Below the pieces are notes generated by a model. That model ran no database searches. It saw only the letters and a program-made list of their open reading frames with translations, and was not told the DNA's origin. The translations under genes and the position numbers were made by a program. A stretch of DNA of 64,000 nt, taken from the IMG/VR virus record IMGVR_UViG_3300027985_000918, positions 248,001 to 312,000 of that record. The stretch is one strand, 5' to 3'. Positions 4,866 through 62,601 of the stretch are shown here, piece after piece. The stretch's first letter is position 1; each line of letters opens with the position of its first letter.

Positions 4866-4880
4866 TATAGGCCATCTACA
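4866..4880 (-). promoter_or_regulatory. Candidate late promoter motif (TGT-N6-CCTATA)
   Basis: Minus-strand TGTAGATGGCCTATA, about 45 nt upstream of the ATG at 4822; one of six similar motifs. Confidence 0.55.
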
Positions 4881-6306
4881 AGAAGAAGAGGTTGGAGGCG
4901 TCTTCCCCTTCGATCTCCCTGGGTTCCTGCACACCGAGGCGATCCACCTCGACGTAATAGCTCTGCCCCGAAACCGACTGCGGCATCCGGGTGTCCAAGC
5001 GCAAGATGCTGGGGGCCGCCCTAACCTTGGTTGCTGGTCCCGGAGCAAACCCTACCCGGCCACCATAGGAACCCAGCACCGTCTTGAGCGGGTAAGAACC
5101 CGCATTGGGACCCGAGGAGAAAGTCAACACCTCCCCCTCTACTGCTAGTGCCCAGTTCTGGTCAGTGTCGGTGATGTCCGAACCGGATACAGTCGCTGTC
5201 CCACTCAATCCCGTGGGGCTGGTGGTGTAAGCCCTTGCCGTGCTGTCGTCTCCGCTGGGGAACACCGCCAGAGCCTCCACCCGATAACGGCCCCGCTCTC
5301 TCCGATCCGTGGAGGCCGAGGTACCCTCCTGTCCCCCAGCATGGATGCCGTTGGGCCCAGATGTGACCACCAAAGGGGCTCCGACAGAGATGCTGGAGAA
5401 ATCTCGGGTCACGTCCTGGAATAGGTTGCGGGTGGTCAGAGTCCGCCCCGCTGTCCCCGTGATCTGCTTGGCCCCAGCGCAGTATCGGCGAAAATCCTCG
5501 TAGTAATAGGTGTCCATGTGCCAGCTCATGGAAGCGTCAAAGAGCTGGCTGAACGTCTCCGAAAACAGATGCCGGTATTCGTACAGAGTGTGGGCGGGCT
5601 TAAGCGCCCGAAGGACAATGCGGACGTTCTCCGCCAGAGTGAAGGGGTCCTCGGGAAACCGCTCCAGCCCCGTAACAGCATCGAGGTAGCTCACGCTAAC
5701 CTCGAACGTGAATTGATCGTCCAATCCCCAAGCGCTGCCAGACCCCAGTCTGCGGGCTTCCACGGCCTTCTCGATGACAGTGAACGTGATGTCCTGGACA
5801 AGGTCCGGGTTTGTGTAGCGGGCAAGGCCCTGGGTGGCCTTGCCCGTCTCATTCAGGGCCTCTCCGATGGTGCCTTTGGTCGCCCCCTGGAGCAAAAATC
5901 GGACCATGCTCTGGAGGAACTGGCGGTAGGTCAGGTCGCCCTGGAAATCTGGGTATCCGTCCGACTTGGCGTCCGGGAACACAAGCTGGCCGAGGACCTG
6001 GAACAGGAACTCGGACCGGGTGAAGTCGTACATGCCGTCCGCCCACACTTCCTGGGCGGTGACCTGGAACTCCGCAATCTGCTCTGCCGCAGCTTGGAAC
6101 TGGAGGGTGTAGAAAGGCCCGCTAACCTGCGAGATGTAGTTGCTCGGCAGGAGCTGGAGGAACACCTTCATAATGGCGTCCGCCTGGTCCCGGACCTTCT
6201 GTTTGTGCTCCTGGGACCCCTGGAGCTTCTGCTCGGGGTATACCGGCTCCGGATTCTGGGACACAAACCCAGGCAGGAGGTTTTTGCTGGCAGGCTTGTC
6301 AGCCAC
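4876..6306 (-). CDS. Baseplate wedge protein (P2 gpI/Mu gp48-like)
   Basis: 476 aa; LLPSNY near the N-terminus and the RALKPAHT motif typical of gpI/gp48-class wedge proteins; follows the J-like gene. Confidence 0.7.
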   Translation of the reverse strand: MADKPASKNLLPGFVSQNPEPVYPEQKLQGSQEHKQKVRDQADAIMKVFLQLLPSNYISQVSGPFYTLQFQAAAEQIAEFQVTAQEVWADGMYDFTRSEFLFQVLGQLVFPDAKSDGYPDFQGDLTYRQFLQSMVRFLLQGATKGTIGEALNETGKATQGLARYTNPDLVQDITFTVIEKAVEARRLGSGSAWGLDDQFTFEVSVSYLDAVTGLERFPEDPFTLAENVRIVLRALKPAHTLYEYRHLFSETFSQLFDASMSWHMDTYYYEDFRRYCAGAKQITGTAGRTLTTRNLFQDVTRDFSSISVGAPLVVTSGPNGIHAGGQEGTSASTDRRERGRYRVEALAVFPSGDDSTARAYTTSPTGLSGTATVSGSDITDTDQNWALAVEGEVLTFSSGPNAGSYPLKTVLGSYGGRVGFAPGPATKVRAAPSILRLDTRMPQSVSGQSYYVEVDRLGVQEPREIEGEDASNLFFL

Positions 6307-6318
6307 GGGTCACCCCCT

Positions 6319-6402
6319 TCACATCATCTCCAGGGCCAAGTTCTCAGAATCCTTGCGGGCCAGATACCCCCGTGCTACCCGGATGGCTGCATCCTTACCC
6401 AT
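6319..6402 (-). CDS. Putative 27-aa peptide MGKDAAIRVARGYLARKDSENLALEMM
   Basis: ATG overlaps the J-like stop (TGATG) and the ORF fills the gap before the next gene. Confidence 0.4.
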   Translation of the reverse strand: MGKDAAIRVARGYLARKDSENLALEMM

Positions 6403-9400
6403 CACCCGTTGCTCCCGTACACTCGTTCCAGGTAATCGGAATCCTCGTCGAAGGTAAGGTCAATCTCCCCAAGCTCCAGGTATTCCGTAGGCCCTGGCTC
6501 GATGTTCTTGACCCCGGTGTCTCCCTGCACCTGGTATGTCACTGTATAACTGTGTCCGACGGGGGTATCCGCCTTCGGCATCGAAACCAGGATGCGATCC
6601 TGGGTGATCTCTTTCCTCTTCTGGATGATCTCCGCTGCCGGGGCGAACGGGTACGCCGCCCGAAGAGTGGCGTCATCCGAATACCCTGGAATCTCCAAGC
6701 CCTGATTGCCGATGATGAACGTGGCCCTGGCACTATTGATGATGGGTACCCCGTTGATGTTTGGGGCCAATACCAGATTGTCCAACAGCTCTTCGTCCTC
6801 GAACACCCCCCGGAACTTCGTGCTCTCCCCACCCGTGTCCGAAGTGGACGATTCCAATCGGTTCTTCAACAGCCAAACATTCGTGGTGCCAGAAAGGGCA
6901 TTCCACTGACTCACCGAGTACACATCCGCCGCCTGGCTGGTCGTGAGGGCTTCTCGGACAACCTGAGCACCATCCCCCTTTGACATCTTGGTCAGCGGTA
7001 CGACCGGGTAAGCCACCCCCGAGACAGAGTCGATGATCCCGAGCACATCGGCCTGTCGGATCGGCTCTCCCAGAGTCAATGCCCCAAAGTACCTTGCCAA
7101 GGCCGTGCGGATGTTGCCATCCACCGTGTCCACAGACAAATTCCGCCGGCTGGAGTTCACCAGGACCACCGTCGCCGTGATGTCCACCGGGACGTTGACG
7201 GCCTCCTTCGTGAGAACGTCCGCCGTGATGTGCCGGTCCGGATCGATCTCGTTCTCAGTTAGACTCACCAGAGCGTTGGACGTGTACTTGACGGTGAAGT
7301 TCTCATCGTACTTGTAGCTGATCAGTAGGGTCTGACCCTCGGAGATGGAAGATCCCGAAGTCACCCGAATACCCATAGGAGTCGTCGGGTCCCCTGCGAT
7401 GATGGTGTAGTCGGGACTGGCCGAAGCAAAAGGCCCGGTGTAAGTTGTCGTCCCCGTCCCATCTTTGACCACCACCGAGTACGGGTTGGCCCCAAGCCGA
7501 TTGACGTACTCGATCCCGTCCAGGATGACATGTTGCTCGTTAGTCACCTCGATAGGTGTCCCGCTGGGGATAGATTCCCCCGTGTCCGTAAGCGGCTCGG
7601 TTACCTTGACGTAGTCCCCTGCTTCGGTGGACCTTCCCAACAAAAGAGGATCGCTGGCCTGGAAGAGGTCGTAGATGGACTCATCCAGCTCTCCGGAAAC
7701 CTCACCTGTCAAACTCACCACCTCACGCACAGGCTGGCGAGTGAAAACGTGCTTGTTGCTCGTCCGGTAACGGTAAGAACCCTGGACGGCATCGGTCAAA
7801 GACAGAGAGGTCGGGTCGTTTAGACTGGTATCGAGTTGGATGATGTTGTACGCCACCACCTCGACATTGGTCAGATCGAACGAGGATCCCTGCGTCTCGT
7901 TGACCAGCTCGATGCCGTAGTCGGGATAATCCAACATCTCAATGATTGGATTGTCCTCGGAAAGATTGGAGTCCACCGCCCGCAGCCGCAGATCTTTCGG
8001 GTCCCCCACAGGCTCGAACTGGATTCCATGCTTGGTCTCGAAGGAGAAGGCGAAGCTGTCCGTCACAGTGGACATGTTCTCGCCCCTCAGCCAGATGTCT
8101 ACCTTCCCCCCGACGTGGACCCCGTTCTCGTTACGGTCCCTCATCATGAGGGGGTGACCGGCGTCCACCACGTTGACCTGCTCAACCCCCGGAACGTCCA
8201 CGGCCTTCTGGACGTAGCCCTGGAGAGTCCCGGAATCCACTGAGGACAGAGCATTCATAGCCCGGGAAGCCAGGTCACGGTTCGATTCTTCCTCCAGGCC
8301 ACCGAAGACGGCGGAGTCGTTGTACACCTGCACTCCGATGGGGGCACCCTCGACCGTCCCCTTCTGCCCAGGTGCCAGGTTCCCCGACACCCCCACGCTC
8401 TCGGCCTGCACGAACGCCGTAGCGCTGTACCTACCCGTGATGGGGTTGAAAAAGCTGCCTGCCCCCGAACTGGTGATGGCAATGGAACTGGTCAGGCGGT
8501 ACGCCTGGCCACCGATGACCACCCGAGTCCCGATACCGAACGTGATGCTCGTGGTAGGCCGGTTGTTTGTGTAGATAGTCACCGAGCCCCGGGCTCGGCG
8601 GCCGGGACGACGGGTCTTCCCGAAATTCGAGGCTAGCTTATCGAACGTATTGTCGATGAGCTGCTGGACGGAGGCGTTGGTATCCAGGAAAAATGCCTGC
8701 TTAAGGGCAATCTTGTAGTCCGACTGCTCGACCGGAACCGAAACCCCCGACAAAGTCGGATCGTCGATGGGGAGCAGGGTGGCGAAGCTCCCCGCCCGAT
8801 GCAAGAAGTCGATGATGAACCGCTGCCTCTCTGCTTCCGTGGAGAAGGGATCGATGAAGGTGTCCCGGAGGACCGATCCAGGCTTGACATCGAGCTGAGG
8901 CTGAGACCTGAAGATGCTCAGGATCGTGTCCCTCACGATGTTCTGCCGGCTAACCGCCGGGAGTGCTCCCACGTTGGGAGCAAGATCGAGAGGGTATCCA
9001 GCCACCTCGGGGCTGAGGGCCGACTCATACTCCACACCGTCAAGAAAGTAAACCGCCGTGACCACGTAGTACAGAGGGTCGGTCTTCGGAATGGCGTTGA
9101 ATCCGGCATGGGGAATTGCCGGGTAGGTTGCTGAGTTAAAGTTCGACAGGCGGTTGTGGATAAAACTGAACCGGGTCACTGTCCGAACCGACTCCACCGT
9201 GATGGTGGACCGAATCCTCGTGGCGTTCTCCGGGACCTCCAAGGCCTGGTCAAAATCCGTCTGAAGGACATTGTCGTCCCGGTCTTCCTGGGTGGCCTTG
9301 AACACCACGTACAGGGGATCAGCAGCAGTCTCTCCTTCCACCCCTGTGGCGACGTTGGCGTCTACCGTCAACTCTCCCAGTTCTGTCAGGTCCTCTACGG

Positions 9401-9917
9401 ACTCCCCCGAGATGACCAAAGCCGGGTTGATCCGAGAGTATCCCTCAGATCCCCCGCCAGGCTGGGTGGAGGCGTAGAAGTGGTACCCGATGACATCGGA
9501 ACTATCGAGCCCATCCACTGTAACCCTGACCACGTTGTTGAACCGCTCGACGTAGATGCCTGTAGGCTCATCAAGGGTGGAGCCGATGTCACTCTCCTGC
9601 ACCAGACGGGCCGTAACGGTGCTTGGCTTGGAGACGGTGCCGTTAGCGAACACCGCCTTGACACGGATGTCGTTGTCCCCTGCCAGAAGTTGGACCCCAT
9701 CCGGGAATGCCGACGGGTTCGGCACCACGAACGTGCTCCCCTCGAAGGCGATGAGGTCGGGGTCACTCGTGTATGCAGCCCCCCGGATGGAGACCTGCAT
9801 GTCCACGGTGTTGGGATCCATCTCTCCTGCGAAGTGGCGGGAGTCGAGGGTCGTCGAGAAGACGTAATCCTCTCGAAGAACTCCGTCAGGACCCTCAAAC
9901 TTGGGGTTGATTGGCAT
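6402..9917 (-). CDS. Baseplate J-like (T4 gp6/P2 gpJ class) wedge protein
   Basis: 1171 aa; DVKPGSVLRD..IDP, LASNFGKTR..G.RARG.V, G..GNLAPG, GGLEEESN..LA.R, VPGV..V.VV, GKVDIWL and late IRQADV..IIDSVSGV motifs of gpJ-family proteins. Confidence 0.85.
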   Translation of the reverse strand: MPINPKFEGPDGVLREDYVFSTTLDSRHFAGEMDPNTVDMQVSIRGAAYTSDPDLIAFEGSTFVVPNPSAFPDGVQLLAGDNDIRVKAVFANGTVSKPSTVTARLVQESDIGSTLDEPTGIYVERFNNVVRVTVDGLDSSDVIGYHFYASTQPGGGSEGYSRINPALVISGESVEDLTELGELTVDANVATGVEGETAADPLYVVFKATQEDRDDNVLQTDFDQALEVPENATRIRSTITVESVRTVTRFSFIHNRLSNFNSATYPAIPHAGFNAIPKTDPLYYVVTAVYFLDGVEYESALSPEVAGYPLDLAPNVGALPAVSRQNIVRDTILSIFRSQPQLDVKPGSVLRDTFIDPFSTEAERQRFIIDFLHRAGSFATLLPIDDPTLSGVSVPVEQSDYKIALKQAFFLDTNASVQQLIDNTFDKLASNFGKTRRPGRRARGSVTIYTNNRPTTSITFGIGTRVVIGGQAYRLTSSIAITSSGAGSFFNPITGRYSATAFVQAESVGVSGNLAPGQKGTVEGAPIGVQVYNDSAVFGGLEEESNRDLASRAMNALSSVDSGTLQGYVQKAVDVPGVEQVNVVDAGHPLMMRDRNENGVHVGGKVDIWLRGENMSTVTDSFAFSFETKHGIQFEPVGDPKDLRLRAVDSNLSEDNPIIEMLDYPDYGIELVNETQGSSFDLTNVEVVAYNIIQLDTSLNDPTSLSLTDAVQGSYRYRTSNKHVFTRQPVREVVSLTGEVSGELDESIYDLFQASDPLLLGRSTEAGDYVKVTEPLTDTGESIPSGTPIEVTNEQHVILDGIEYVNRLGANPYSVVVKDGTGTTTYTGPFASASPDYTIIAGDPTTPMGIRVTSGSSISEGQTLLISYKYDENFTVKYTSNALVSLTENEIDPDRHITADVLTKEAVNVPVDITATVVLVNSSRRNLSVDTVDGNIRTALARYFGALTLGEPIRQADVLGIIDSVSGVAYPVVPLTKMSKGDGAQVVREALTTSQAADVYSVSQWNALSGTTNVWLLKNRLESSTSDTGGESTKFRGVFEDEELLDNLVLAPNINGVPIINSARATFIIGNQGLEIPGYSDDATLRAAYPFAPAAEIIQKRKEITQDRILVSMPKADTPVGHSYTVTYQVQGDTGVKNIEPGPTEYLELGEIDLTFDEDSDYLERVYGSNG

Positions 9918-9927
9918 CCGTCCTCCG

Positions 9928-11085
9928 TCACTTAAGCATCCGACTGGCCTCTGCTGGACTCAGGCCGGTCGATTCAAGTCCAAGGAAGAGGCCGTTCGAG
10001 CCCATCAAGGCAACGACCTCGGGCACTGTGAAGATGGTGGTCAGGTTGATCGGCTCCGAGGATGCGTTCTGTACCCACACATCGATCAGAAACGTCGTAG
10101 GGTCCTGTTCATGCGGGAGGACCTGGATACTCAGAACCGAATACAGGCGCTCCTTAGGGGTCACTACCTGTACCTCGGACTGAGACTTCTGGAGGGCCTG
10201 GAACCTGGAGAGGGCTCGCCGGATGTCGTCCTGAAGGGCTGCGGCTACGTTGCCGAGGGCCTTGCTCCCAATTCGAGATCGGAGAGTAGTCCCGTACCAG
10301 TTATGGTACGGATTGGACCCCCGGTCCGTCAACAGAATCTTGAGCGCTGCCTGCTGGAGAAGATCCTCGTTGTCCAGAAAAATGGGGCTCCCATCAACGG
10401 AAAACCTGTAGTCGTTCTCTACATAGGTAGCCCGACAACGGAGGCACCGGCGGGCGGGAACCGAGTAGGTAACCTTGAGGATGGGATTAGACTTGAGAGC
10501 AGTGACGAACTTGGGCACCCGATTCGTGATGGTGTCCGGGCGGACCTCCAAGGTCCACCCTGGGAACAAATTTCTTCCCCTGGCAGACCTCTGCCGGCCA
10601 TTGATTCCGGAAGCACCAAACCCCAAAGAAACTGCTGCCGTCCCCGTCACCCTCACGTAGCTGTCGGGACCTACCCGAGTCGTATCCGAGATGAGCAAAT
10701 GACCCCCAATGTCCTCCACCAAGGCAGTCGTGCTGAGCAAACCGAGCTGAGCCAGGCGCTTGATTACCTGGCTAGCCTTCCAGCGGACCTTTCCCTTGAC
10801 CCCCAGTGTCCCAGTAAAGGTCCCACCCGGAGTCGTAATGGTGAGGGTATCCTCGTTCTCAGTCAGTGTGAAGGGACCGGACTCAGTAGAAAAGAGCTGG
10901 GCCACCGAAGACAAACCCGTCGAGGGAATGACCAAGCCGGGATCGTCGTTCACCATGATCCGAACCGTCCCCGCAGATGCGATAGGTTGACGGGTCTGCA
11001 AAGTCCGGCGGTCACCCCCCAGACGTACCACTTCCTCCACCGTCAGATGGGGGCACGGCCACGAAAGAGCATAGTCCTGGCTCAT
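9928..11085 (-). CDS. gp25/GPW-like baseplate protein with N-terminal extension
   Basis: 385 aa; C-terminal LLQQAALKILLTDRGSNPYHNWYGTTL matches the gp25 family pattern; immediately upstream of the J-like gene. Confidence 0.75.
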   Translation of the reverse strand: MSQDYALSWPCPHLTVEEVVRLGGDRRTLQTRQPIASAGTVRIMVNDDPGLVIPSTGLSSVAQLFSTESGPFTLTENEDTLTITTPGGTFTGTLGVKGKVRWKASQVIKRLAQLGLLSTTALVEDIGGHLLISDTTRVGPDSYVRVTGTAAVSLGFGASGINGRQRSARGRNLFPGWTLEVRPDTITNRVPKFVTALKSNPILKVTYSVPARRCLRCRATYVENDYRFSVDGSPIFLDNEDLLQQAALKILLTDRGSNPYHNWYGTTLRSRIGSKALGNVAAALQDDIRRALSRFQALQKSQSEVQVVTPKERLYSVLSIQVLPHEQDPTTFLIDVWVQNASSEPINLTTIFTVPEVVALMGSNGLFLGLESTGLSPAEASRMLK

Positions 11086-11132
11086 TACGGGGTCCTCGGG
11101 GCTCCTAGTCTCCGCTTCACTTTACCGGGGCT

Positions 11133-11147
11133 TATAGGCTGCGAACC
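11133..11147 (-). promoter_or_regulatory. Candidate late promoter motif (GGT-N6-CCTATA)
   Basis: Minus-strand GGTTCGCAGCCTATA upstream of the ATG at 11085. Confidence 0.6.
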
Positions 11148-11167
11148 GGGCCCCAAGCCTAAGGGTA

Positions 11168-11195
11168 GGTAACACCGAACCCTTAACGGGTAGGT
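11168..11195 (+). promoter_or_regulatory. Candidate ECF-like promoter GGTAAC-N16-GTAGGT
   Basis: Upstream of the plus-strand DUF4419 gene; the same architecture occurs at 46860, 47199 and 59286. Confidence 0.55.
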
Positions 11196-11240
11196 GAGCA
11201 GGGCTAAGCGAAGAAACCTGCGAGCCTATCAGGAGGACCT

Positions 11241-12305
11241 GTGAGCTATACTTTTCAGGTGGGGGACTTCCCCATCGGTGAACACTTCAAGAGGAGCCGA
11301 CCCCCCATGCGCCATTGGCTAGCGGGTCGAGGGGATCACCGGGAACGTGACAGGAACTCGGTCCAGAGCAAGGTACAGGGGGTCACCCTCTACAGCTCCC
11401 CCACCGAAACCGTGGGCGGGACCAGCCCCTTGTTCCACACGCTGGGGTACGCCTTCAACAGCCACTGCCCGATGGTGCTCACCCCAGACTCGGTCTGGCT
11501 CACCATCCTCACCGGCCTCACCCACCACATCGACACAGACCCCGAAGGCCTGCGGACTCATTTCGTGAACTTCGAGGGGCGGCAAACGCTGACGTACCTC
11601 GCTGGGGGGGACCGCTTCTCCAAGGACTACCCAAACATCGTCATCCCCTACTTCGCAGAACAGCTCCAAGACTTCATCGGCAAGAAGGCCGACCTCATCG
11701 TCAACAACTTCAGCACCACGACGCCAGAGGACCGGGTCTCGTCCCAGGTGGCCCTCATGGGGGCCATGAAGCACTGGTTCGATTACAAGATGATGTTCTG
11801 CTGCAACCTCACCCGGATCACCGTCGAGGGGACCCCAGAGGACTGGGGCAACATCATCGACCGGGCCGGGGCCCTGACCGAGTTCGGCCTGGGGTGGTGG
11901 ACAGACCACCTGATCCCGATCCTCGACGAGATTCGCAAATCGGCGGAGGGCACCCCGAGCATCGAGTTCTGGAAGAACGCCTACCTCAAACACCGCAAGG
12001 GTTCGGGGAGCCAGTACGATGTGTCCGGCTGGATCAACGCCCTCTACCCCTACGTGGCGGGCACAAAGGGGAAGATGCGGCAGAACCCCTACGTGGACTG
12101 GCAGAAGGACCACGGGGGGCGCTACCCGGGCCTCGATTCCGACGATTTCCCGCTGGGGATCGTGAAAGCTCCGGTCGAAATCAACGACAACGGCCACGTC
12201 GTCCGGGCCGAGTTCGTCGGAGGCCTCGTGGGAGTCTCCATGGCGGACGACTTCACCGTGAAACCCGTCTCCGGAATCGCTCTCCAGGAATTGGAGGAAG
12301 CATGA
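11241..12305 (+). CDS. DUF4419 domain protein
   Basis: 354 aa; H.P.VL.PD.VWL.I, FVNFEG, FSTTT..D, LMG.MK.WFDY, IT.EGT.EDW and SGWI..LYP motifs; AGGAGG RBS before GTG. Confidence 0.85.
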   Translation: MSYTFQVGDFPIGEHFKRSRPPMRHWLAGRGDHRERDRNSVQSKVQGVTLYSSPTETVGGTSPLFHTLGYAFNSHCPMVLTPDSVWLTILTGLTHHIDTDPEGLRTHFVNFEGRQTLTYLAGGDRFSKDYPNIVIPYFAEQLQDFIGKKADLIVNNFSTTTPEDRVSSQVALMGAMKHWFDYKMMFCCNLTRITVEGTPEDWGNIIDRAGALTEFGLGWWTDHLIPILDEIRKSAEGTPSIEFWKNAYLKHRKGSGSQYDVSGWINALYPYVAGTKGKMRQNPYVDWQKDHGGRYPGLDSDDFPLGIVKAPVEINDNGHVVRAEFVGGLVGVSMADDFTVKPVSGIALQELEEA

Positions 12306-13024
12306 AACCTTCTGAACTGTATGCCCGTACCCCGTCCGCCGTGAGCTACAACCTATACTTGCTCAGCCGAGTCCTGGAGGAAGAGGGGCTGTACAACATC
12401 GACCCCGGGAGCAGAAACCAAAAACTCAGGAAGGTCGAGATCCGCATCTACAAGGACTTCGTCTTCGATGATCGTCGCACATGGACACTGCTCTCGGCCT
12501 TCTTCGAGGGGAAGCCCGTATTCATCCTCCAACAAGCAGGGAGAGAGGGGGGTGACCACACCGAGACATTCATCACCGACCGTGAGCAGTGGCTGGGGCT
12601 GATCTACTATGCCCGGTCCCTATGCCCCGAGGACGACAACCCGGTGTACGATCCAGAGGAGGACATCGAGAACTTGGACCAGTTCTATGGATGCTCCCTG
12701 AGCACTACCGACTGGGACGGGATCTCCCGCAGGGATATACTGTACTGGGCGGGGAATGGATTCTTCTCCGAAGGGACGCCCAAGTGGCTCAAGACTCTGA
12801 CGGGCCTTACCGGAGAGGCAGCCCTCCAGGGAAAACTGGGGAGCTACAGCCACCCCGAAGAACTCGTCTACCTGATCGGGGAGCACCTTGTCACCCTGTG
12901 CCCCACGAACACCACCTTCGTGGTGAAGGTGGACGGTGAGACCATCATCGAAAGGGCCTACCCCCTCTGGGAGGAGCTGCGGGAATACATCCGCTGCTCG
13001 GTCATCGAGTTCGCCTCGAAGTAA
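12302..13024 (+). CDS. Hypothetical protein (about 240 aa)
   Basis: True start likely the ATG at 12302 (ATGA overlap with the DUF4419 stop, GGAGG upstream) rather than 11894. Confidence 0.7.
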   Translation: MKPSELYARTPSAVSYNLYLLSRVLEEEGLYNIDPGSRNQKLRKVEIRIYKDFVFDDRRTWTLLSAFFEGKPVFILQQAGREGGDHTETFITDREQWLGLIYYARSLCPEDDNPVYDPEEDIENLDQFYGCSLSTTDWDGISRRDILYWAGNGFFSEGTPKWLKTLTGLTGEAALQGKLGSYSHPEELVYLIGEHLVTLCPTNTTFVVKVDGETIIERAYPLWEELREYIRCSVIEFASK

Positions 13025-13903
13025 TCACCCTCCCAGGGGATCCCGGATCTCGTCGGTCACGTCTGCGAACGTGAAATCGAGAAACCCCACCTTCATACTG
13101 GACCGGAAGGCCCTAACCTGCTCGGGGCCCTCCAGATCGAACAGCAACTCGTAGAAGTCATTCACCAGGCTGGGCACCGTTAGCCCAGTCGAAAAGCGCT
13201 CCCCATCAAGGACTGGGAGGGCATCAAGACTCCCTCCGAAGGCCTGCATGAGAACCTGGTCCCGCTCCAAAGTGAGCTGCTCACGTAGGTCCATCTGCTT
13301 GATGATCCTCCATTCGAGGTCTTGCAACTTCTCCTTGATGGCCTGGTTTGCCCACTCCCTCATCTTGTTCATGGCCTTGGCAGTGGTGAGATCCGACTGG
13401 CTGACCCGCCCACCGAGACGTGCAGGGTAGTACCTATTCGTGTTCAGGTATCCCCCCTGGTGTCCCGTATACCCCGAGCCCCCCGTCTCGTGGGCAGGAT
13501 TGTTGGCCTCCACACTCCGAGGAGCCACCACACCACCGTGAGGGTAGGTGGTTCCAAGTCTAGGGGTCCCGTCGTCGGTCTGCCCCATCAACCGAGTCAT
13601 GTCCGGCATCCAGAACGGAGAGATATCCAGAGGGTTTCCTCCGTTGGCGATGTACGCCTGTACCAACTTTTCCAAAGTCGAATTGGGAGTCACGCTGACC
13701 CCCATCCGCTCTTCTGTGACAGCGTAGGACCCGTCTGGGTTCACTATCTGACGGTACTCCACCTGCACAAAGCCGATCCTCTCGATCTCTGCGTTCAGGG
13801 TGTTGATACGAGAAGCTACGTCCCGCCGCTCCCTCAGCAGCCATGAGCTGAACGCCCGGAAATATCCCGGGGGGAAGAACGACATTTTGGAGAAAGAGGC
13901 CAT
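13025..13903 (-). CDS. Hypothetical virion-associated protein
   Basis: 292 aa ORF with GAGG RBS, in the structural operon. Confidence 0.7.
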   Translation of the reverse strand: MASFSKMSFFPPGYFRAFSSWLLRERRDVASRINTLNAEIERIGFVQVEYRQIVNPDGSYAVTEERMGVSVTPNSTLEKLVQAYIANGGNPLDISPFWMPDMTRLMGQTDDGTPRLGTTYPHGGVVAPRSVEANNPAHETGGSGYTGHQGGYLNTNRYYPARLGGRVSQSDLTTAKAMNKMREWANQAIKEKLQDLEWRIIKQMDLREQLTLERDQVLMQAFGGSLDALPVLDGERFSTGLTVPSLVNDFYELLFDLEGPEQVRAFRSSMKVGFLDFTFADVTDEIRDPLGG

Positions 13904-13911
13904 ATTTCACC

Positions 13912-46346: not shown

Positions 46347-46361
46347 TATAGGCCCGCAATC
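46347..46361 (-). promoter_or_regulatory. Candidate late promoter motif (GAT-N6-CCTATA)
   Basis: Minus-strand GATTGCGGGCCTATA upstream of the tube gene; downstream GCGGAGA is shared with the 11133 copy. Confidence 0.6.
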
Positions 46362-46407
46362 GAGATCCGGCTACTTGACTTGAATGAGAGAGCACCCAGG
46401 ATGAAAG

Positions 46408-47185: not shown

Positions 47186-47198
47186 GTATCTGAAGGTA

Positions 47199-48078: not shown

Positions 48079-48130
48079 CCTTTCCTGGAACGGATCTACT
48101 GGAGGCTGCACCCCCAGAAGGGGGACTGAG

Positions 48131-48170: not shown

Positions 48171-48175
48171 GATTC

Positions 48176-53494: not shown

Positions 53495-53512
53495 CTTCGT
53501 ACCTCTCTTCAA

Positions 53513-53642
53513 GGTGGTCAGTTTTCCAGCTCAAAAAAGCATCCGTTGTGCTTGCCGCATTTCGCCTCCCTTTGGGGGGAGGTAACCGGAAAGTTCTTCC
53601 GGAGCCCGAGTTGCGCTTATCTTTGCTGGCTATCTGACCACC
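53513..53642 (-). ncRNA. Putative structured cis-regulatory RNA (copy 1) in sheath leader
   Basis: Closing stem ggtggtcag/ctgaccacc, inner ccagc/gctgg and cgca/tgcg, hairpins ccggaa/ttccgg, cctccc/gggagg and aagca/tgctt; ends just 5' of the RBS. Confidence 0.65.
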
Positions 53643-53696
53643 GCAAAGCGGGGATGGCTTTCAGGGGCTATTTGCCCTCTGCTGATAAGCCGGGGG

Positions 53697-53711
53697 TATA
53701 GGCGTCCTACC
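53697..53711 (-). promoter_or_regulatory. Candidate late promoter motif (GGT-N6-CCTATA)
   Basis: Minus-strand GGTAGGACGCCTATA, about 200 nt upstream of the sheath ATG. Confidence 0.6.
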
Positions 53712-53714
53712 GAC

Positions 53715-54168: not shown

Positions 54169-55023
54169 TCACGTTTCACCGTACCCGAAATCGTGCTTGA
54201 TCTTCTCCACGTCAAGGTGCAGTCCCCCATCCCACACCAGATACCGCTTGCCCAGGAGAAACAGAAGTCGGGCAGCCAATGCGGCTGGCAAAAGGGTGAA
54301 CGTCCCAAACCCAAACGAGTTCATCAAGAACCCGATGGCACTACCTGGCAGGGAAGACAACAGATCAGACAGGGACAATGCGCCTGTGAGGGCATCCGTC
54401 AGCGAGTGGATATCCCACTCGAACTCCGTCACGTTCATCCAGATCCAAATGTAAACGGCAAGCATCAACACCCTGGACATGGCTGGAGCGTACTTCCGCA
54501 GCCAGTGATCGAACTGGTCTACCTTAGGCTTGACCGACGACTGCACCCACTTCTTGAATCCCGGCAGCTTGTCCATCCATTGGGAGATGAGGCTGTTGAC
54601 GCTCAGTAGCTTGGATTCTTCCAACGTGAACAGCTTAAGGGGGAAGGTGCTGAACATCTTCCCCACCGCCTTGCGAAGGGCCTGATACCCCTGCTTCGCC
54701 AGGTCCTTGATGGCCCCGGGCAGCTCCAAAAGGGACTTGATCCCCAGCCTGTCCTTGAAGGCCTCCCAGAGCTTCTTGCTCTTGGAGAACACCTTGCCAA
54801 GCTGCTGGAGCTTCTGACGAATATTCCCGAAGGCCACCTTGCCGTGAGGGAGGAGGAACTCCCCGAACGCTTCCAGAACCTCGGGGGTGATCTCCTGGAA
54901 GTGGGCCGTCTTGGCACCTACGGAGGAAATACTGTGATGAGCCTCCCGGGCGGCCATTCGGATCGTGAATCGAACCGCCAGGCGCTGGGCATCTCTCATG
55001 AGGGTATCGTTCATCTGACTCAC
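54169..55023 (-). CDS. Hypothetical protein with C-terminal hydrophobic segments
   Basis: 284 aa; ATGA overlap with the upstream gene; VLMLAVYIWIWM and a second hydrophobic stretch. Confidence 0.7.
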   Translation of the reverse strand: MSQMNDTLMRDAQRLAVRFTIRMAAREAHHSISSVGAKTAHFQEITPEVLEAFGEFLLPHGKVAFGNIRQKLQQLGKVFSKSKKLWEAFKDRLGIKSLLELPGAIKDLAKQGYQALRKAVGKMFSTFPLKLFTLEESKLLSVNSLISQWMDKLPGFKKWVQSSVKPKVDQFDHWLRKYAPAMSRVLMLAVYIWIWMNVTEFEWDIHSLTDALTGALSLSDLLSSLPGSAIGFLMNSFGFGTFTLLPAALAARLLFLLGKRYLVWDGGLHLDVEKIKHDFGYGET

Positions 55024-56228
55024 CGAATCAGGGCGTAGCCCTTACCGACCTGGTAGTAAGGGTCCCGGACTGTGCTTAGACCCAGATGGGTCATGGCCTT
55101 GATGTTGCCTTCCTGCCCTACCAGTTCCTCATCCGAGAGCCCGGCGATGTAATTGGCCTGCTCCAGGGTAAGAGGGGTGACCTGGCGAAGGTTGACGTTC
55201 AGCGGGACGTAGGCAGCCCACTCCGTCTCCACTGTGAGTGAGAAGCTGGAGTTGAAGATGTAGTCTTCCCCCTGCTCATCATAAATCTCTTCGGACTCCC
55301 CCCCGATGGAGATGTTCATGATCTCCAGCCCCTCCGTGGAGAGCTGCCCCCTAGCGGCGCCGAACAAATACATGACGGAGTTGTCCGCAATCTCCCGCTG
55401 GTCAAACACGTCCCGGGCGAACACCTCGAAGTCCATCGTCATCTCCCACCGGCCCCCGTACTCCAGGGCGGAGGGCCGTCGGGTCGTCTCCACTACAACG
55501 GCGAGCTGGTCCCCATTGAACACCCTCCTCCCGAAAGCCAGGACTACCCCTGGAATGGCCGTGTTGTTGGCATGCCTCTCGATGATTCGGTGGGGCCCCG
55601 TGCTTTCAGTCACATAACGGTAGTCTGCCTGGAGCCACCTGCCCCCCGACAGAGGGGTAGTCAGGTTGATGACACCCGTGGGCGATCCCGAGTCGGGGTC
55701 CGTCTCCAAAGTATAGTTGGACCCCTCCACCATCATGTACCGGGCGGGCATCTCGAATAGCCGGAGAGTCCCAGCCACAGGGGAATTTGCAAGGACTCCC
55801 GTGGTGGTGTCCGATAGCATGACCTGTTCGTGGTACACGTTCAGGAGGGGGTCCACATAGAAGACCATGTTCCCGTCTTCCTCCATCACGTCCAGGTAGT
55901 AAACCCCAGGAGGACTGGGAAACACCCCGCCGTTTCTCTGGATCTCCCGGATGTCCTCCCGAACCCACTCCACCGAGTACCCCGGCTTGTTGTTCACCTT
56001 AGCCCAGTGGCAATGGCTGTACACAACCCCCCGATAGTTGTCGGCCGAGAGAGGGATATGGCTTCCACCACCCGACTTGACCACGATCCCCCGCTGGGGA
56101 CGATCCTTGAAGCTGTACTTTCCCTGGATGTTGTCGGGCAAGTCTGAAAACTTCGGGTGGGTCAGCCAGTACCTTCGCAGCTCCTGAATGAAGCGGCGGG
56201 TTAGGTAGTCGGTTAGCTGGAAAAACAT
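55020..56228 (-). CDS. Putative tail terminator/neck completion protein
   Basis: ATG at 56228 after GGAGG; MDFEVFARDVFDQREIAD..V.YL and YIFNSSFSLTVETEW resemble the terminator fold; between neck and sheath genes. Confidence 0.5.
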   Translation of the reverse strand: MFFQLTDYLTRRFIQELRRYWLTHPKFSDLPDNIQGKYSFKDRPQRGIVVKSGGGSHIPLSADNYRGVVYSHCHWAKVNNKPGYSVEWVREDIREIQRNGGVFPSPPGVYYLDVMEEDGNMVFYVDPLLNVYHEQVMLSDTTTGVLANSPVAGTLRLFEMPARYMMVEGSNYTLETDPDSGSPTGVINLTTPLSGGRWLQADYRYVTESTGPHRIIERHANNTAIPGVVLAFGRRVFNGDQLAVVVETTRRPSALEYGGRWEMTMDFEVFARDVFDQREIADNSVMYLFGAARGQLSTEGLEIMNISIGGESEEIYDEQGEDYIFNSSFSLTVETEWAAYVPLNVNLRQVTPLTLEQANYIAGLSDEELVGQEGNIKAMTHLGLSTVRDPYYQVGKGYALIR

Positions 56229-56261: not shown

Positions 56262-56276
56262 GATAGGCTACCCACC
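56262..56276 (-). promoter_or_regulatory. Candidate late promoter motif variant (GGT-N6-CCTATC)
   Basis: Minus-strand GGTGGGTAGCCTATC upstream of the ATG at 56228. Confidence 0.45.
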
Positions 56277-56603
56277 GGGAAGGAGGCGCAGAAGCCCTCG
56301 GCCGTCGAACAGTTCGAGTCGGCCAGTAGGGGTTCGGATCAAGTCCCATGCCACTCTCTGAGGAACCCGGGCTTGGGCAATACGGTTTGCCTGGGGGGTG
56401 ACTAAGGGGTTCAGGAAGATCCCCCCCCAGTCAGGGGGCTTGATCTTGGATATGGGGATCAGATGCCAGACATAGTCCGCCACGAGGAACCCCAGATATC
56501 TCCGTTTGGGGTCATCGTAAGATCTCAGCCAAGCTCCCTTACGGAGGGCCACCTCGGCTCTCCTAAGCCACCCGCCCAGAGACCTGGAAACTACCTCCCT
56601 CAC
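56268..56603 (-). CDS. Hypothetical basic protein
   Basis: 111 aa ORF abutting the GroES-like stop. Confidence 0.55.
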   Translation of the reverse strand: MREVVSRSLGGWLRRAEVALRKGAWLRSYDDPKRRYLGFLVADYVWHLIPISKIKPPDWGGIFLNPLVTPQANRIAQARVPQRVAWDLIRTPTGRLELFDGRGLLRLLPGG

Positions 56604-56969: not shown

Positions 56970-57998
56970 TCAGTCCTCTTCGTGCTCGATGATGGCCTGG
57001 GTCAGCATCCCGTTCGCAACCGCATTCATGGGATCGGAGGCGTGCCGGATCTCAGACACCTGGACGGGGAATCTCTTCCGTCGCTTATCGAACTCCCGCT
57101 CAAAGAGCTGGAGGAAATTACCCGCCATGCTCGTACCCCCGGAGACCACCAGAGGGATGGGAGTGGGCAACTCGAACTGCCCCTTGATATCCTTGAAACG
57201 CTTGGCGATCTCGTCGAGGGCGTAGCGGATCAGCTCCTTGTAATAGAAGGTAATCGCTTCCTGCTCCCTCCCCTGAGGATTCAGAAGGTCCACCCCCGCC
57301 TCCTTGATGGCACAGATACGGGCCTGGGTGGACCCCACCGACCCGGCGACCCCAGAATCGATCCAATCCCCACCACGAGCCACCGAGAAAGACAGCCCTT
57401 CGATGGTGTTGATGGCGAGAGCCACGTTGGTCATCCCTGAGCCGAAGCTCAGAGCGATTCCGCTGAACCCGTTCTTAGCGCACTCCGAGAACACAATCGC
57501 CATCGCCTCGTTGCTAGGCCAGGGGGTGTAGCCGCATTCCTCGACGATCCTCTCAAAGACCCCCTTGTGGTAGATCACGTCCTTCTGGGGACGGTCGACA
57601 GGGGCTGCGGGGACCGAGAAGTAGCAGTGCTCCCCGGTGATTCTGGGGGGCCCCAGGATCTGCCTGATCATCATCCCGAGAACTTCCAGAGCCTCGATCT
57701 CACCGGCAGCCACCAAACCTGCTTCGAGGGGCCGCCGGGCCTCTTTGCCGAAAACGTTGGCGGTCTCCATCGCAGCATCTCCCAGCAGGAGCACGTCATC
57801 TTCTCGCTCAACGAAGCTGGTCCCCGACAGCTTGAGCATCTTCTTGGCGGACGGGGGAAGATCCAGAAAGGCATCCCGCATCCGATTGTGCTCCACCCCG
57901 TTGGGGGTCCTGCGAGCCGCCACCAAGTTCATAGTGCCGATGTCGAGCCCTACCCCATGGGGAGCCTGAGTCGTTGCTTCTTTCTTTGTGGGTGCCAT
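56970..57998 (-). CDS. Actin-like ATPase (MreB/ParM/MamK superfamily)
   Basis: Phosphate-1 GLDIGTMN, connect-1 NEAMAIV, phosphate-2 LSFGSGMTN, adenosine VVSGGTS and connect-2 NAVANG motifs; 342 aa. Confidence 0.9.
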   Translation of the reverse strand: MAPTKKEATTQAPHGVGLDIGTMNLVAARRTPNGVEHNRMRDAFLDLPPSAKKMLKLSGTSFVEREDDVLLLGDAAMETANVFGKEARRPLEAGLVAAGEIEALEVLGMMIRQILGPPRITGEHCYFSVPAAPVDRPQKDVIYHKGVFERIVEECGYTPWPSNEAMAIVFSECAKNGFSGIALSFGSGMTNVALAINTIEGLSFSVARGGDWIDSGVAGSVGSTQARICAIKEAGVDLLNPQGREQEAITFYYKELIRYALDEIAKRFKDIKGQFELPTPIPLVVSGGTSMAGNFLQLFEREFDKRRKRFPVQVSEIRHASDPMNAVANGMLTQAIIEHEED

Positions 57999-59285: not shown

Positions 59286-59313
59286 GGTAACCCAAGCGGC
59301 CCCGCAAGTAGAT
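59286..59313 (+). promoter_or_regulatory. Candidate ECF-like promoter GGTAAC-N16-GTAGAT
   Basis: Upstream of the isolated plus-strand gene. Confidence 0.55.
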
Positions 59314-59335: not shown

Positions 59336-59779
59336 ATGCAGAACCTGACTGTGAGCGCCGTAAAGAACTTTTACCGCAACCCGAAAACCTCCGCCTTGCG
59401 GGTTGCCGTTTTGGCGGCCCGGGAAATCGCCGCCGAGCGGAGGACCCATGTCGATGGGTACATCAAACCGCTCTTGGCGGTGATGGACCTGCGGGACACG
59501 AAGGGAGAGCAGATTCTCGACACCAAGTGGCTCTTCCTCTGCGAGGATGAGGACGCCTGCACCGCATTCTACGCCGCCTGCGACGTGGCCCATCGGGAAC
59601 ACGGGTTCCATCTGGAACCTGGCTACTGCCCCGCCCTCGTGGCGGAGAGCAACGCCATCAACGCCGAGAACGCCCTCATCGAAGCGGCCTCCGCCCACTT
59701 CGAGGTGGACTTCACTCGCCTCTTCAAGCTGGAACAACGACGTCAGCTCTTGGACCTCCTAGTCAACGGCGTCTACTGA
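59336..59779 (+). CDS. Hypothetical protein (about 147 aa)
   Basis: AAGGAG RBS before the ATG at 59336; codon style matches the other plus-strand genes. Confidence 0.7.
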   Translation: MQNLTVSAVKNFYRNPKTSALRVAVLAAREIAAERRTHVDGYIKPLLAVMDLRDTKGEQILDTKWLFLCEDEDACTAFYAACDVAHREHGFHLEPGYCPALVAESNAINAENALIEAASAHFEVDFTRLFKLEQRRQLLDLLVNGVY

Positions 59780-61899: not shown

Positions 61900-62291
61900 C
61901 TCCGAGCCTCCTTCTTATCCTGGGGTGTGGCCTCCTTGAAACAGCCCGACCACCCGTACCGGAGGGCAGCCTGGTCCAAGGACATTCGGTGCCTCTCCAG
62001 GAGTTGTCTCTTGATGCCCTCCAGGTCACCGTTCATCCTGGTGACCCGCTTGCTCGACCTCTTGATCACCTTCCGCTGAACCCTCAGCTCGTCCAAAGGA
62101 ACCCCTTGAAGCTGCAAGGAGGAAGCGGGCTCGGAAGACTCCACTTCCACCACAACGATGGGATCTGCGGGGGCTGGCACTGGGGCAGATGCCGCTTCTT
62201 CGTTGGGGTTCCCTGGGGGGGAAGAAGAGCTTGGGGTATCTGCCGCCACGCACCCCCCAAGGAACAGGAGAGCCAGGAGGCTACTGGCCAC
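61863..62291 (-). CDS. Putative lipoprotein
   Basis: GTG at 62291 gives (M)ASSLLALLFLGGC, a lipobox-like signal, then a Pro/Ser linker and a coiled coil; 142 aa. Confidence 0.55.
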   Translation of the reverse strand: MASSLLALLFLGGCVAADTPSSSSPPGNPNEEAASAPVPAPADPIVVVEVESSEPASSLQLQGVPLDELRVQRKVIKRSSKRVTRMNGDLEGIKRQLLERHRMSLDQAALRYGWSGCFKEATPQDKKEARRWRMWCRAKTRK

Positions 62292-62541
62292 CTCTCTCCC
62301 GAAGAAGCTCTTTGATTTCCCGGATGTTGGCCTCGACGCCATTGAACTTTTCCTCCATGCGGAACAGCGTTTTTGAGTTCTGGCGAACCTCGGTGACCAC
62401 GTCAGCCGCCTCCGCCTGATCATCTTCCAGAACTGCCAACCTTACCTCCAGGCTCACTGCCCAGATCATAAGGGGGACGACAAGGGCCGAGAGGATCTTG
62501 AAGACCCACTCCCAGGTATTGCTGGTGGATTCGTCTGCCAT
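62281..62541 (-). CDS. Small single-TM coiled-coil membrane protein (holin/spanin-like candidate)
   Basis: 86 aa; TM WVFKILSALVVPLMIWAVSL followed by a coiled coil; AGGAGG RBS. Confidence 0.65.
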   Translation of the reverse strand: MADESTSNTWEWVFKILSALVVPLMIWAVSLEVRLAVLEDDQAEAADVVTEVRQNSKTLFRMEEKFNGVEANIREIKELLRERGGQ

Positions 62542-62586
62542 TCCGTCCTCCTTTCACGGCGGGGGCTCTTTTATCTGAAGTCGGAG

Positions 62587-62601
62587 TATAGTCAGAAGAA
62601 C
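62587..62601 (-). promoter_or_regulatory. Candidate late promoter motif variant (GTT-N6-ACTATA)
   Basis: Minus-strand GTTCTTCTGACTATA at the head of the structural operon. Confidence 0.4.

What the first reader, a model, noticed from the sequence alone, without database searches (positions are those of the whole stretch)
4866..62601. Recurrent GGT-N6-CCTATA motif marks starts of structural transcription units
Seen: six copies, all on the minus strand and in or at the edge of rare intergenic gaps upstream of structural genes: 4866-4880, 11133-11147, 46347-46361, 53697-53711, 56262-56276 (CCTATC) and 62587-62601 (ACTATA). Copies restart the cluster after two of the plus-strand islands. It does not match sigma70 or the T4 late TATAAATA. 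Inference: a lineage-specific late promoter read by a phage sigma factor or RNA polymerase.
Basis: partly seen in the sequence, partly recalled or inferred. Interest (0 to 1): 0.7.

Follow-up and report, generated by a model that had tools for sequence, protein, structure and literature searches.

The report
Conserved compact promoter of huge phage
The six sites are real copies of an 18-base signal (cGGTag-N4-CCTATA) that sits just upstream of tail, baseplate and head genes of an uncultivated 402-kb phage and its relatives, and is most likely a phage-specific late promoter, although no transcript data exist to prove it.

Summary
The window lies in a complete 402-kb phage genome from a hydrothermal-vent metagenome. 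The literal pattern GGT-N6-CCTATA is weak: only 2 of the 6 sites match exactly. The motif is nevertheless real as a degenerate 18-bp element, c-G-G-T-a-g-N4-(C/T)-C-T-A-T-(A/C). YCTATA lies 20-130 nt upstream of a same-strand start 13, 11 and 20 times in three related genomes, against about 1 expected (p 3e-11 to 5e-21). A matrix trained only on a third genome recovers five of the six window sites among its top 29 hits. In 16 orthologous pairs the motif is 85% identical against 45% in the flanks. The element precedes the probable tail-tube gene in about 16 phage lineages of 45-68% GC. It heads minus-strand runs after plus-strand islands. A second, far commoner promoter type complements it: GGTAAC-N16/17-GTAG, 86 copies, serving the other half of the genome and the plus-strand islands. 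A few sigma-70-like promoters also exist, one in front of a phage sigma-like gene. The genome encodes three sigma-like proteins and no detectable RNA polymerase. Best reading: a late-class promoter for host polymerase redirected by phage factors. Which factor reads it, and the transcript start, remain untested.

The parts
4866..4883 (-). Class B element. It reads ttcTTGTAGATGGCCTATA (TGT in place of GGT) and lies 44 nt upstream of the 1007-aa baseplate-like gene 1799-4822.
   Evidence: matrix score 16.3. Rank 9 with the matrix trained on G002 alone. The G001 ortholog reads CTGTAGTTGGCCTATA. PHROG baseplate protein.
11133..11150 (-). Class B element, exact GGT-N6-CCTATA (cccGGTTCGCAGCCTATA). 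It lies 48 nt upstream of the baseplate gene 9928-11085, the first minus-strand gene after the plus-strand island 11241-13024. It stands back to back with a class A promoter.
   Evidence: score 20.3; rank 12; G001: GATTCGCAGCCTATA.
46347..46364 (-). Class B element (ctcGATTGCGGGCCTATA). It lies 63 nt upstream of the 277-aa gene 45451-46284 (probable tail tube), the first minus-strand gene after the plus-strand island 46411-48078.
   Evidence: score 18.3; rank 2. The element is conserved upstream of this gene's orthologs in about 16 lineages. Tube assignment is a lead only.
53697..53714 (-). Class B element, exact match (gtcGGTAGGACGCCTATA). It lies 203 nt upstream of the 1772-aa tail sheath gene 48176-53494, followed by a conserved, structured leader.
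   Evidence: score 19.6; rank 5; G001: GTCGATAGCTCCCCTATA; sheath; leader fold z = -4.05.
56262..56279 (-). Class B element with core CCTATC (cccGGTGGGTAGCCTATC). It lies 34 nt upstream of the 402-aa gene 55020-56228 and overlaps the 3' end of the preceding ORF.
   Evidence: score 19.2. The 16-mer CGGTGGGTAGCCTATC is identical in G001.
62587..62604 (-). Weaker class B element (tgcGTTCTTCTGACTATA). It lies 46 nt upstream of the 86-aa gene 62281-62541, the first minus-strand gene after the plus-strand island that starts at 62623 (thyX). Its complement reads TATAGT and could also serve thyX as a -10.
   Evidence: score 12.1; rank 29. The G001 ortholog has the full GGTCTTCTGCCTATA. The G002 ortholog has cGGGTAGAACGTCTATA 40 nt before its start.
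11169..11193 (+). Contrasting class A promoter GGTAAC-N16-GTAG, driving the plus-strand island gene 11241-12305.
59287..59311 (+). Contrasting class A promoter GGTAAC-N16-GTAG, 25 nt upstream of the plus-strand gene 59336-59779.
   Evidence: A G001 counterpart with GGTAAC...GGTAGTAG is seen.

Best explanation
The element is a compact, about 18-bp, phage-specific promoter of the late (morphogenesis) class: c-G-G-T-a-g, four free bases, then (C/T)-C-T-A-T-(A/C). It has no -35 box.

Proposed mechanism:
- Host RNA polymerase core is redirected to the element by phage-encoded sigma-type factors.
- The CTATA half plays the role of a -10-like melting element, and transcription starts within about 12 nt downstream.
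- The cGGT half lies one helical turn upstream and is read by a second helix-turn-helix domain.

Proposed programme: host sigma-70-like promoters fire first, including the one before the sigma-like gene at G000 394592-396115. The GGTAAC-N16/17-GTAG promoters follow for the bulk of non-structural genes. Class B then serves baseplate, sheath, tube and head genes.

Shown: the motif, its position and orientation, its conservation, its complementary distribution with class A, the presence of three sigma-like genes, and no detected RNA polymerase gene. Inferred: promoter activity, timing, the start site, and which protein reads it.
For: - Enrichment in promoter position in three genomes: 13/54, 11/26 and 20/61 YCTATA against 1.0, 0.4 and 1.0 expected (p 3e-11, 5e-14, 5e-21).
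- The upstream half-site is specific to promoter-positioned copies.
- A matrix trained on 19 G002 sites places 19 of its top 30 G000 hits in promoter position.
- Footprint in 16 G000-G001 orthologous pairs: 85% identity within the motif (CTAT 100%) against 45% in both flanks, and the conserved block starts only 2-3 nt upstream of cGGT.
- Clade-wide conservation before the probable tube gene at 45-68% GC: 24 of 331 cores have the half-site at the exact offset, against 0-2 in slid-window controls.
- The element heads minus-strand runs after strand switches, where a new promoter is obligatory.
- Complementary distribution: class A 46 sites below 165 kb and 11 above; class B 4 below and 18 above (Fisher p 4e-7). 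Above 222 kb, 5 of 6 class A sites are on the plus strand and all class B sites are on the minus strand.
- In the shortest-leader sites, the Shine-Dalgarno sequence starts 13 nt after CTATA, so the start must lie within about 12 nt of it.
- Canonical sigma-70 promoters are not enriched in the window.
- Three sigma-like genes are present, all conserved in G002. No Rpb2_6, Rpb1_2 or T7-type polymerase domain was found.
- A precedent exists for phage sigma factors reading single compact elements with the start 6-8 bp downstream (phiEco32; PMC8948821).
Against: - There is no transcript evidence of any kind; no RNA run was listed.
- CTATA lacks the conserved final T of a sigma-70 -10 hexamer.
- About a third of sites carry a GTAG-like element 7-12 nt downstream. 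GTAG is also the -10 of class A, so the element could be an upstream activator site rather than the core promoter.
- The class is not purely late. A PhoH-like gene carries the element, and so does the head of a run that contains ribonucleotide reductase and helicase genes.
- No sigma-like protein is linked to the motif by any test.
- LR745208.1 keeps homologs of the sigma-like proteins but shows a different motif (GTATATAC) before its sheath gene.
Confidence: 0.62

Rival explanations
1. The element is the operator of a phage DNA-binding regulator, not the core promoter. The best candidate is the 202-aa protein made of two sigma-region-4 helix-turn-helix domains (G000 364554-365162). The regulator would sit at about -25 to -40 and activate (or repress) a nearby GTAG-type -10 read by one of the phage sigma factors, much as the MotA box works at T4 middle promoters.
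For: - The two half-sites (GnTAG and CTATA) have centres 10 bp apart, one helical turn, which suits two tandem HTH domains.
- RRTAG followed by purines is enriched 10-14 nt downstream of CTATA in promoter-positioned copies only.
- The distance from that TAG to the start codon (median 24 nt) is similar to that from the class A GTAG (median 32 nt).
- GTAG-only elements without GGTAAC are common before genes in the same region.
- The tandem-HTH gene is the best conserved of the three sigma-like genes (79% in G001, 58% in G002).
- Its small downstream neighbour carries a class B site.
Against: - Only about a third of sites have the downstream GTAG.
- In the shortest-leader sites, a -10 placed 10-14 nt after CTATA would put the start beyond the Shine-Dalgarno sequence.
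- Sequence immediately downstream of CTATA is poorly conserved between orthologs (19-69% at +1 to +10).
- LR745208.1 has an ortholog with an invariant second HTH, yet no enrichment of the motif.
- The protein-DNA prediction was not run by the tool and gives no evidence either way.
Confidence: 0.22
2. The element is the promoter of an unrecognised phage-encoded RNA polymerase. This could be a very divergent single-subunit enzyme hidden in one of the giant ORFs. Initiation would be right after TATA, as at T7 and SP6 promoters (...CACTATA|G).
For: - The element is compact and contiguous, about 18 bp, ends in CTATA, is often followed by G, and has no -35.
- Resemblance to the 3' half of T7/SP6 promoters (from memory; a lead only).
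- Several giant ORFs of 1700-3900 aa have no family match at all.
Against: - No hit to the T7-type polymerase family PF00940 or to the multisubunit polymerase domains in a complete genome. PF00940 had no positive control.
- The base after CTATA is not conserved (G 16, C 14, A 9, T 4 of 43).
- The single D-V-D-G-D motif in the 1748-aa ORF is at chance frequency.
- Three sigma-like genes argue for use of the host core enzyme.
Confidence: 0.07
3. The element acts at the RNA level, as a processing site, a leader motif or part of a terminator between operons, and not in initiation.
For: - It lies in intergenic gaps within long co-directional runs.
- Some copies are palindromic (CCTATAGG).
- The sheath leader next to one site is strongly structured.
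Against: - Conservation is of sequence, not of pairing; most copies are not palindromic and no compensatory pattern is seen.
- Several copies sit at the heads of runs after strand switches, where no upstream transcript on that strand is expected.
- Terminator-like sites are not enriched.
- No Rfam family matches.
Confidence: 0.04

Closest known systems
phiEco32 middle/late promoters (tAATGTAtA) read by the phage sigma gp36
   Same: Both are a single compact element without a -35 box, ending in T-A-t-A. Both lie before middle or late genes of a phage that lacks its own polymerase but encodes an ECF-like sigma. In phiEco32 the start lies 6-8 bp downstream (PMC8948821). Here the short-leader sites require a start within about 12 nt.
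   Different: The sequence differs, and here there is a second conserved half-site (cGGT) 10 bp upstream, giving 18 bp in all. The reading factor is unidentified. No start sites are mapped. The phage is an uncultivated 402-kb myovirus-like phage, not a podovirus.
T4 late promoters (TATAAATA) with gp55, gp33 and the sliding clamp gp45
   Same: Both are a -10-only, A/T-rich element before virion genes. Promoter recognition is split among small phage proteins related to sigma domains. Here a two-domain region-4 protein and a 102-aa neighbour lie next to a clamp-loader gene. Jumbo phages without a polymerase typically carry sigma plus gp33-like factors (PMC7824862).
   Different: The motif is not TATAAATA. 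An upstream half-site is present. No gp55 or gp33 homology was tested or shown.
Phage 7-11 late promoters GTAAtg-(16)-aCTA read by the phage sigma gp47
   Same: This is the closest known match to the second (class A) promoter type found here, GGTAAC-N16/17-GTAG. Both are ECF-style bipartite promoters with the same spacing (PMC8948821).
   Different: In 7-11 the bipartite class is late, whereas here it serves the non-structural half of the genome and the plus-strand islands.
Bacillus phage SPO1 late promoters (CGTTAGA ... GATATT) with gp33 and gp34
   Same: The recalled -35 box CGTTAGA resembles the CGTTAG half-site seen in several relatives. SPO1 has an adjacent gene pair of about 200 and 100 aa, as here.
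   Different: The SPO1 consensus is from memory. The spacing differs (about 18 bp there against 4 bp here). BLASTP finds no similarity between the protein pairs (E 2.4, and no alignment).
T7/SP6-type single-subunit polymerase promoters
   Same: Contiguous element of similar length ending in CTATA.
   Different: No such polymerase gene was detected. The +1 base is not conserved. The upstream half has a different sequence and spacing.

Membership tests
Canonical sigma-70 (housekeeping) promoter | TTGACA-like -35 box 16-18 bp upstream of a TATAAT-like -10 box with conserved A at position 2 and T at position 6 | tested here: not met
   The conserved block starts only 2-3 nt upstream of cGGT and flanks are 45% identical, so there is no -35 box. 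The base two positions after TATA is T in only 9 of 43 sites. The consensus scan finds 1 site in window 44-64 kb against 3.6 expected, and none at the motif. True sigma-70-like promoters exist elsewhere in the genome.
T4-type late promoter | 8-bp TATAAATA centred at -10 | tested here: not met
   The core is (C/T)CTAT(A/C) followed by variable bases.
T4-type late promoter | gp55-like sigma, gp33-like co-activator and clamp dependence | not tested
   No gp55 or gp33 family model was searched. Only the general sigma-70 model was used, which found three sigma-like genes. A clamp-loader gene lies beside the tandem region-4 gene.
Single-element promoters of phage ECF-like sigma factors (phiEco32 type) | One compact conserved element, no -35 box, located before middle or late genes | tested here: met
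   18-bp footprint with unconserved flanks. Located before baseplate, sheath, tube-like and head-region genes.
Single-element promoters of phage ECF-like sigma factors (phiEco32 type) | Transcription starts 6-8 bp downstream of the element | not testable with these tools
   No RNA run was listed. The only indirect bound is from the short-leader sites: the start lies within about 12 nt.
Single-element promoters of phage ECF-like sigma factors (phiEco32 type) | Recognition by a phage-encoded sigma bound to host core polymerase | tested here: inconclusive
   Sigma-like genes are present: 373 aa (TIGR02937, 41 bits), 507 aa (18 bits), and 202 aa with two region-4 domains. No test links any of them to the motif.
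T7-like single-subunit polymerase promoter | Phage encodes a T7-type RNA polymerase | tested here: not met
   PF00940 found no candidate in the complete genome. The search had no positive control, so a very divergent enzyme is not excluded.
T7-like single-subunit polymerase promoter | Conserved initiating G directly after TATA | tested here: not met
   The base after CTATA is G in 16, C in 14, A in 9 and T in 4 of 43 sites.
Multisubunit-polymerase promoters of phiKZ-like jumbo phages | Phage-encoded split beta/beta' subunits | tested here: not met
   No match to RNA_pol_Rpb2_6 or RNA_pol_Rpb1_2, although both rang in all 14 control genomes.
SPO1 late promoter system (gp33/gp34) | Homology of the phage factors to gp34 and gp33 | tested here: not met
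   BLASTP gave E 2.4 for the 202-aa protein against gp34, and no alignment for the 102-aa protein against gp33.
Sigma-54 promoter | GG and GC doublets 10 bp apart (-24/-12) | tested here: not met
   The GG of cGGT and the G-C before CTATA are 7 positions apart, not 11, read directly from the aligned sites.

The most novel reading that the evidence does not exclude
The 18-bp element is read, across a whole clade of huge phages with 45-68% GC, by a new kind of minimal promoter-recognition factor. This factor is built from two sigma-region-4 helix-turn-helix domains (the conserved 202-aa protein) and contacts the two half-sites one helical turn apart. It would dock on the polymerase flap, so late promoter recognition would work without a conventional sigma region 2/-10 interaction, or with recognition split between separate small proteins.
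Probability: 0.12. Interest if true: 0.75.

Novelty: new variant of a known kind. Interest (0 to 1): 0.5.

Why it matters
Huge phages from metagenomes have no cultured hosts, and their gene-expression programmes are essentially unknown. This analysis proposes a three-tier promoter map read from sequence alone.

- Sigma-70-like early promoters.
- 86 ECF-style GGTAAC-N16/17-GTAG promoters.
- The compact cGGTag-N4-CCTATA class before virion genes.

The map comes with three candidate phage sigma-type factors. The third signal stays constant in relatives whose base composition ranges from 45 to 68% GC.

If confirmed, the map would allow several things:
- Temporal classes of hundreds of unannotated genes could be assigned in this clade.
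- Operon boundaries could be drawn.
- Defined DNA templates and small proteins would be available for biochemical study of how a phage redirects host RNA polymerase.

It is not a surprise in kind, because phage-specific late promoters are well known.

Tried and rejected
- **Archaeal TATA box.** This was suggested by the Volactin (archaeal actin) hit at 56970-57998 and by CCTATA itself. It was rejected for three reasons: the phage tRNA-Tyr is 84 nt with a long variable arm, a bacterial trait; sigma-like genes and TTGACA-N17-TAnnnT promoters are present; and GGAGG sits 5-15 nt before start codons.
- **Class B as a class A promoter with CCTATA in the spacer.** The GGT-to-GTAG distance is 3-4 bp longer than in class A at most sites, and two thirds of sites lack the downstream GTAG.
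- **Sigma-54 reading.** Rejected on spacing.
- **SPO1 gp33/gp34 homology.** No sequence similarity.
- **Transcript evidence.** Only DNA runs hold the window, and no RNA run was listed for the probable tube gene.
- **Protein-DNA complex** of the 202-aa protein with the 53697 site. The tool did not fold it, so it is no evidence either way.
- **Fold of the 277-aa probable tube protein.** pLDDT was 31, which is unusable.
- **Solved-structure sequence searches** of the 1748-aa ORF, the 507-aa sigma-like protein and the 202-aa protein gave nothing significant.
- **Giant ORFs.** PHROG and Pfam scans gave no hits.
- **Distant relatives.** LR745208.1 and Tunturiibacter phage Tunturi_5 show no enrichment of either motif. 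LR745208.1 has GTATATAC before its sheath gene instead.
- **First structure job.** It was re-run without them.
- **Literature.** A search for CCTATA as a phage promoter found nothing relevant.
Full report
**Context.** The window is bases 248001-312000 of a single 402,383-bp IMG/VR virus record with direct terminal repeats and 60% GC. Only DNA runs from a hydrothermal-vent metagenome hold it. It is a tailed phage.
- Baseplate and wedge proteins lie at 1799-4822, 6402-9917 and 9928-11085.
- A 1772-aa tail sheath lies at 48176-53494.
- Outside the window are the major head protein, head protease and large terminase.
- The host is bacterial. The phage tRNA-Tyr is 84 nt long, which implies the long variable arm typical of bacteria. 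GGAGG precedes start codons, and sigma-like genes and sigma-70-like promoters are present.
- I called 396 genes with a simple codon-usage caller. All positional statistics depend on these calls.

**The observation.** The literal pattern is weak.
- There are two exact matches against 0.16 expected.
- With one mismatch there are 8 against 6.2 expected.
- CCTATA alone occurs 8 times against 6.7 expected.
- GGT is present in only three of the six sites.

**The motif is real genome-wide.**
- GCCTATA is the most enriched 7-mer in oriented upstream gaps: 10 of 15 copies. For GCCTATAG it is 8 of 10.
- YCTATA lies in an intergenic position 20-130 nt before a same-strand start 13 times out of 54, against 1.0 expected (p 3e-11).
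- Copies in that position carry a specific upstream half-site, unlike the 98 other copies. C is found in 30 of 43 and G in 23 of 43. T is found in 36 of 43, against 24 of 98 among the others. A G precedes the core in 28 of 43.

**Relatives.** The sheath protein found a 223-kb relative, G001, collinear with 174-377 kb of this genome at about 65% protein identity.
- In 16 orthologous upstream regions the 15-nt motif is 85% identical, with CTAT at 100% and the T of GGT at 100%. Both flanks are 45% identical, and the conserved block begins only 2-3 nt upstream of cGGT.
- Site 56262 (CGGTGGGTAGCCTATC) is identical in both genomes.
- The weak site 62587 (GTT...ACTATA) corresponds to a perfect GGTCTTCTGCCTATA in G001.
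- A complete 436-kb relative, G002, shares 167 proteins at a mean 46% identity. It shows the same enrichment: 20 of 61 against 1.0 expected (p 5e-21).
- A matrix trained on G002 sites alone puts 19 of its top 30 hits in this genome in promoter position. Five of the six window sites rank 2, 5, 9, 12 and 29.
- The 277-aa gene at 45451-46284 is a probable tail tube, by a feature-based lead only. It has 80 relatives in IMG/VR.
- In those with at least about 53% identity (GC 45-68%), the element tCGnTAG-N4-YCTATA sits 35-90 nt before the start. The half-site is at the exact offset in 24 of 331 cores, against 0-2 in slid-window controls.
- More distant relatives (LR745208.1, Tunturiibacter phage Tunturi_5) lack the motif. 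LR745208.1 has GTATATAC before its sheath gene.

**Other promoter classes.** Two further signals came out of the same analysis.
- GGTAAC-N16/17-GTAG occurs 86 times. The spacing histogram has 55 and 31 counts at 16 and 17, and at most 4 at any other spacing. Most copies lie 25-60 nt before start codons.
- This is an ECF-style bipartite promoter, very like the GTAAtg-(16)-aCTA late promoters read by the phage 7-11 sigma factor (PMC8948821).
- It dominates the first 165 kb and the plus-strand islands of the structural region, including window sites 11169 and 59287. The CCTATA class dominates the minus strand from 168 to 395 kb. The counts are 46 and 11 against 4 and 18 (Fisher p 4e-7).
- A handful of canonical TTGACA-N17-TAnnnT promoters also exist. 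One lies before the sigma-like gene at 394592-396115, and others lie before the tRNA clusters.

**Machinery.**
- No multisubunit or T7-type RNA polymerase domain was found.
- Large conserved non-structural proteins are helicases, ribonucleotide reductase and similar enzymes.
- The general sigma-70 model finds three genes:
  - a 373-aa protein with regions 2-4 (85015-86136);
  - a 507-aa protein with a weak region 2-4 match (394592-396115);
  - a 202-aa protein with two region-4 domains (364554-365162).
- The model of the 202-aa protein superposes on SigF, sigma-E and SigR region 4.
- All three are conserved in G002.
- This fits jumbo phages that lack a polymerase and carry sigma and gp33-like factors (PMC7824862).

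**Mechanism.** I favour a compact promoter.
- It must provide initiation at the heads of runs after strand switches (11133, 46347, 62587, and the 55-gene run headed at G000 394416).
- It has no -35 box.
- In the shortest-leader copies, the Shine-Dalgarno sequence begins 13 nt after CTATA. The start must therefore lie within about 12 nt, as for the phiEco32 single-element promoters, where the start is 6-8 bp downstream.
- The main rival is an activator site for the tandem region-4 protein. The half-site centres are 10 bp apart. About a third of sites have a GTAG-like element 7-12 nt downstream, and GTAG is also the class A -10.
- Against this rival: the short-leader sites, the poor conservation just downstream of CTATA, and LR745208.1, which keeps the protein but not the motif.
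- An unrecognised phage polymerase, an RNA-level role and chance are less likely.

**Limits.**
- There are no transcript data.
- Gene calls are my own.
- 'Late' is inferred from gene function and is not exclusive, because a PhoH-like gene and a run containing replication genes also carry the element.
- No test links a factor to the motif. The one protein-DNA prediction was not run by the tool.

**Verdict.** The promoter interpretation is well supported by sequence statistics and comparative data, though unproven. It is a new promoter variant of a known kind, of moderate interest.

Noticed in passing
window 11169-11193 (+) and 59287-59311 (+); G000 genome-wide: A second and much stronger promoter-like motif, GGTAAC-N16/17-GTAG, occurs 86 times in the genome. 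It lies mostly 25-60 nt before start codons. It serves the non-structural half of the genome and the plus-strand islands of the window. In G001 the -10 part reads GGTAGTAG, and in G002 AGAGTAGTCTAGG.
   Followed up: yes
G000 82195-82842 (outside the window): An array of about 13 alternately oriented GGTAAC-N17-GTAG promoters lies in roughly 126-bp repeats within 650 bp, with no called genes. It sits 2 kb from the 373-aa sigma-like gene. Two further such promoters lie antisense inside that sigma gene (85670 and 85745).
   Followed up: no
window 56970-57998 (-): A 342-aa protein matches Pfam Volactin (PF25216) over its full length (E 2e-69). Volactin is an actin family described from haloarchaea. 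Here it is encoded in a bacterial huge phage between tail genes, and it is 84% identical in G001.
   Followed up: partly
window 53495-53696 (-): The roughly 200-nt leader between the class B site and the sheath start is well conserved in G001. It folds far better than shuffles (-78 kcal/mol, z = -4.05). It contains a hairpin followed by a U-run (GCUUUUUUGAGC), so it may be an attenuator or regulatory leader. There is no Rfam match.
   Followed up: partly
window 17186-28888 (-): A 3900-aa ORF lies in the tail/baseplate block. Neighbouring ORFs of 1748, 1097 and 1013 aa are also present. None of those scanned has a Pfam, PHROG or PDB sequence match. The 3900-aa ORF is 68% identical in G001 and 44% in G002.
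   Followed up: partly
G000 394465-394497 (+), 45494, 48554, 70615 (+), 153832, 30811 (-): There are a few canonical TTGACA-N16/17-TAnnnT promoters, some with TGG just upstream of the -10. One lies before the 507-aa sigma-like gene and others before the tRNA clusters. They are probably the host-read early class.
   Followed up: partly
G000 9128-14380, 45969-49396, 57202 and 158402-158477: ARAGORN finds 30 tRNA genes in two clusters. One of them has anticodon CTA (reported as tRNA-Pyl) and is therefore a potential amber suppressor. The genes nevertheless read open under the standard code.
   Followed up: no
G000 385053-389531 and 397039-402111 (outside the window): A class II ribonucleotide reductase gene and an SNF2-type helicase gene each carry an intein with a LAGLIDADG homing-endonuclease domain.
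   Followed up: no
window 62542-62622: In the divergent gap between the 86-aa gene and thyX (62623-63591, Thy1, E 1e-51), the complement of the class B core reads GGAGTATAGTCAG. This is a fair -10 (TATAGT) 37 nt before thyX, so one conserved block may serve both strands.
   Followed up: partly
G000 328800-328890 (outside the window): Directly downstream of a strong class B site there is a tandem duplication of about 29 bp (CCCGGACCTGATAGGCGAGTAGAGGCTCG). Each copy contains a GAGTAG element.
   Followed up: no
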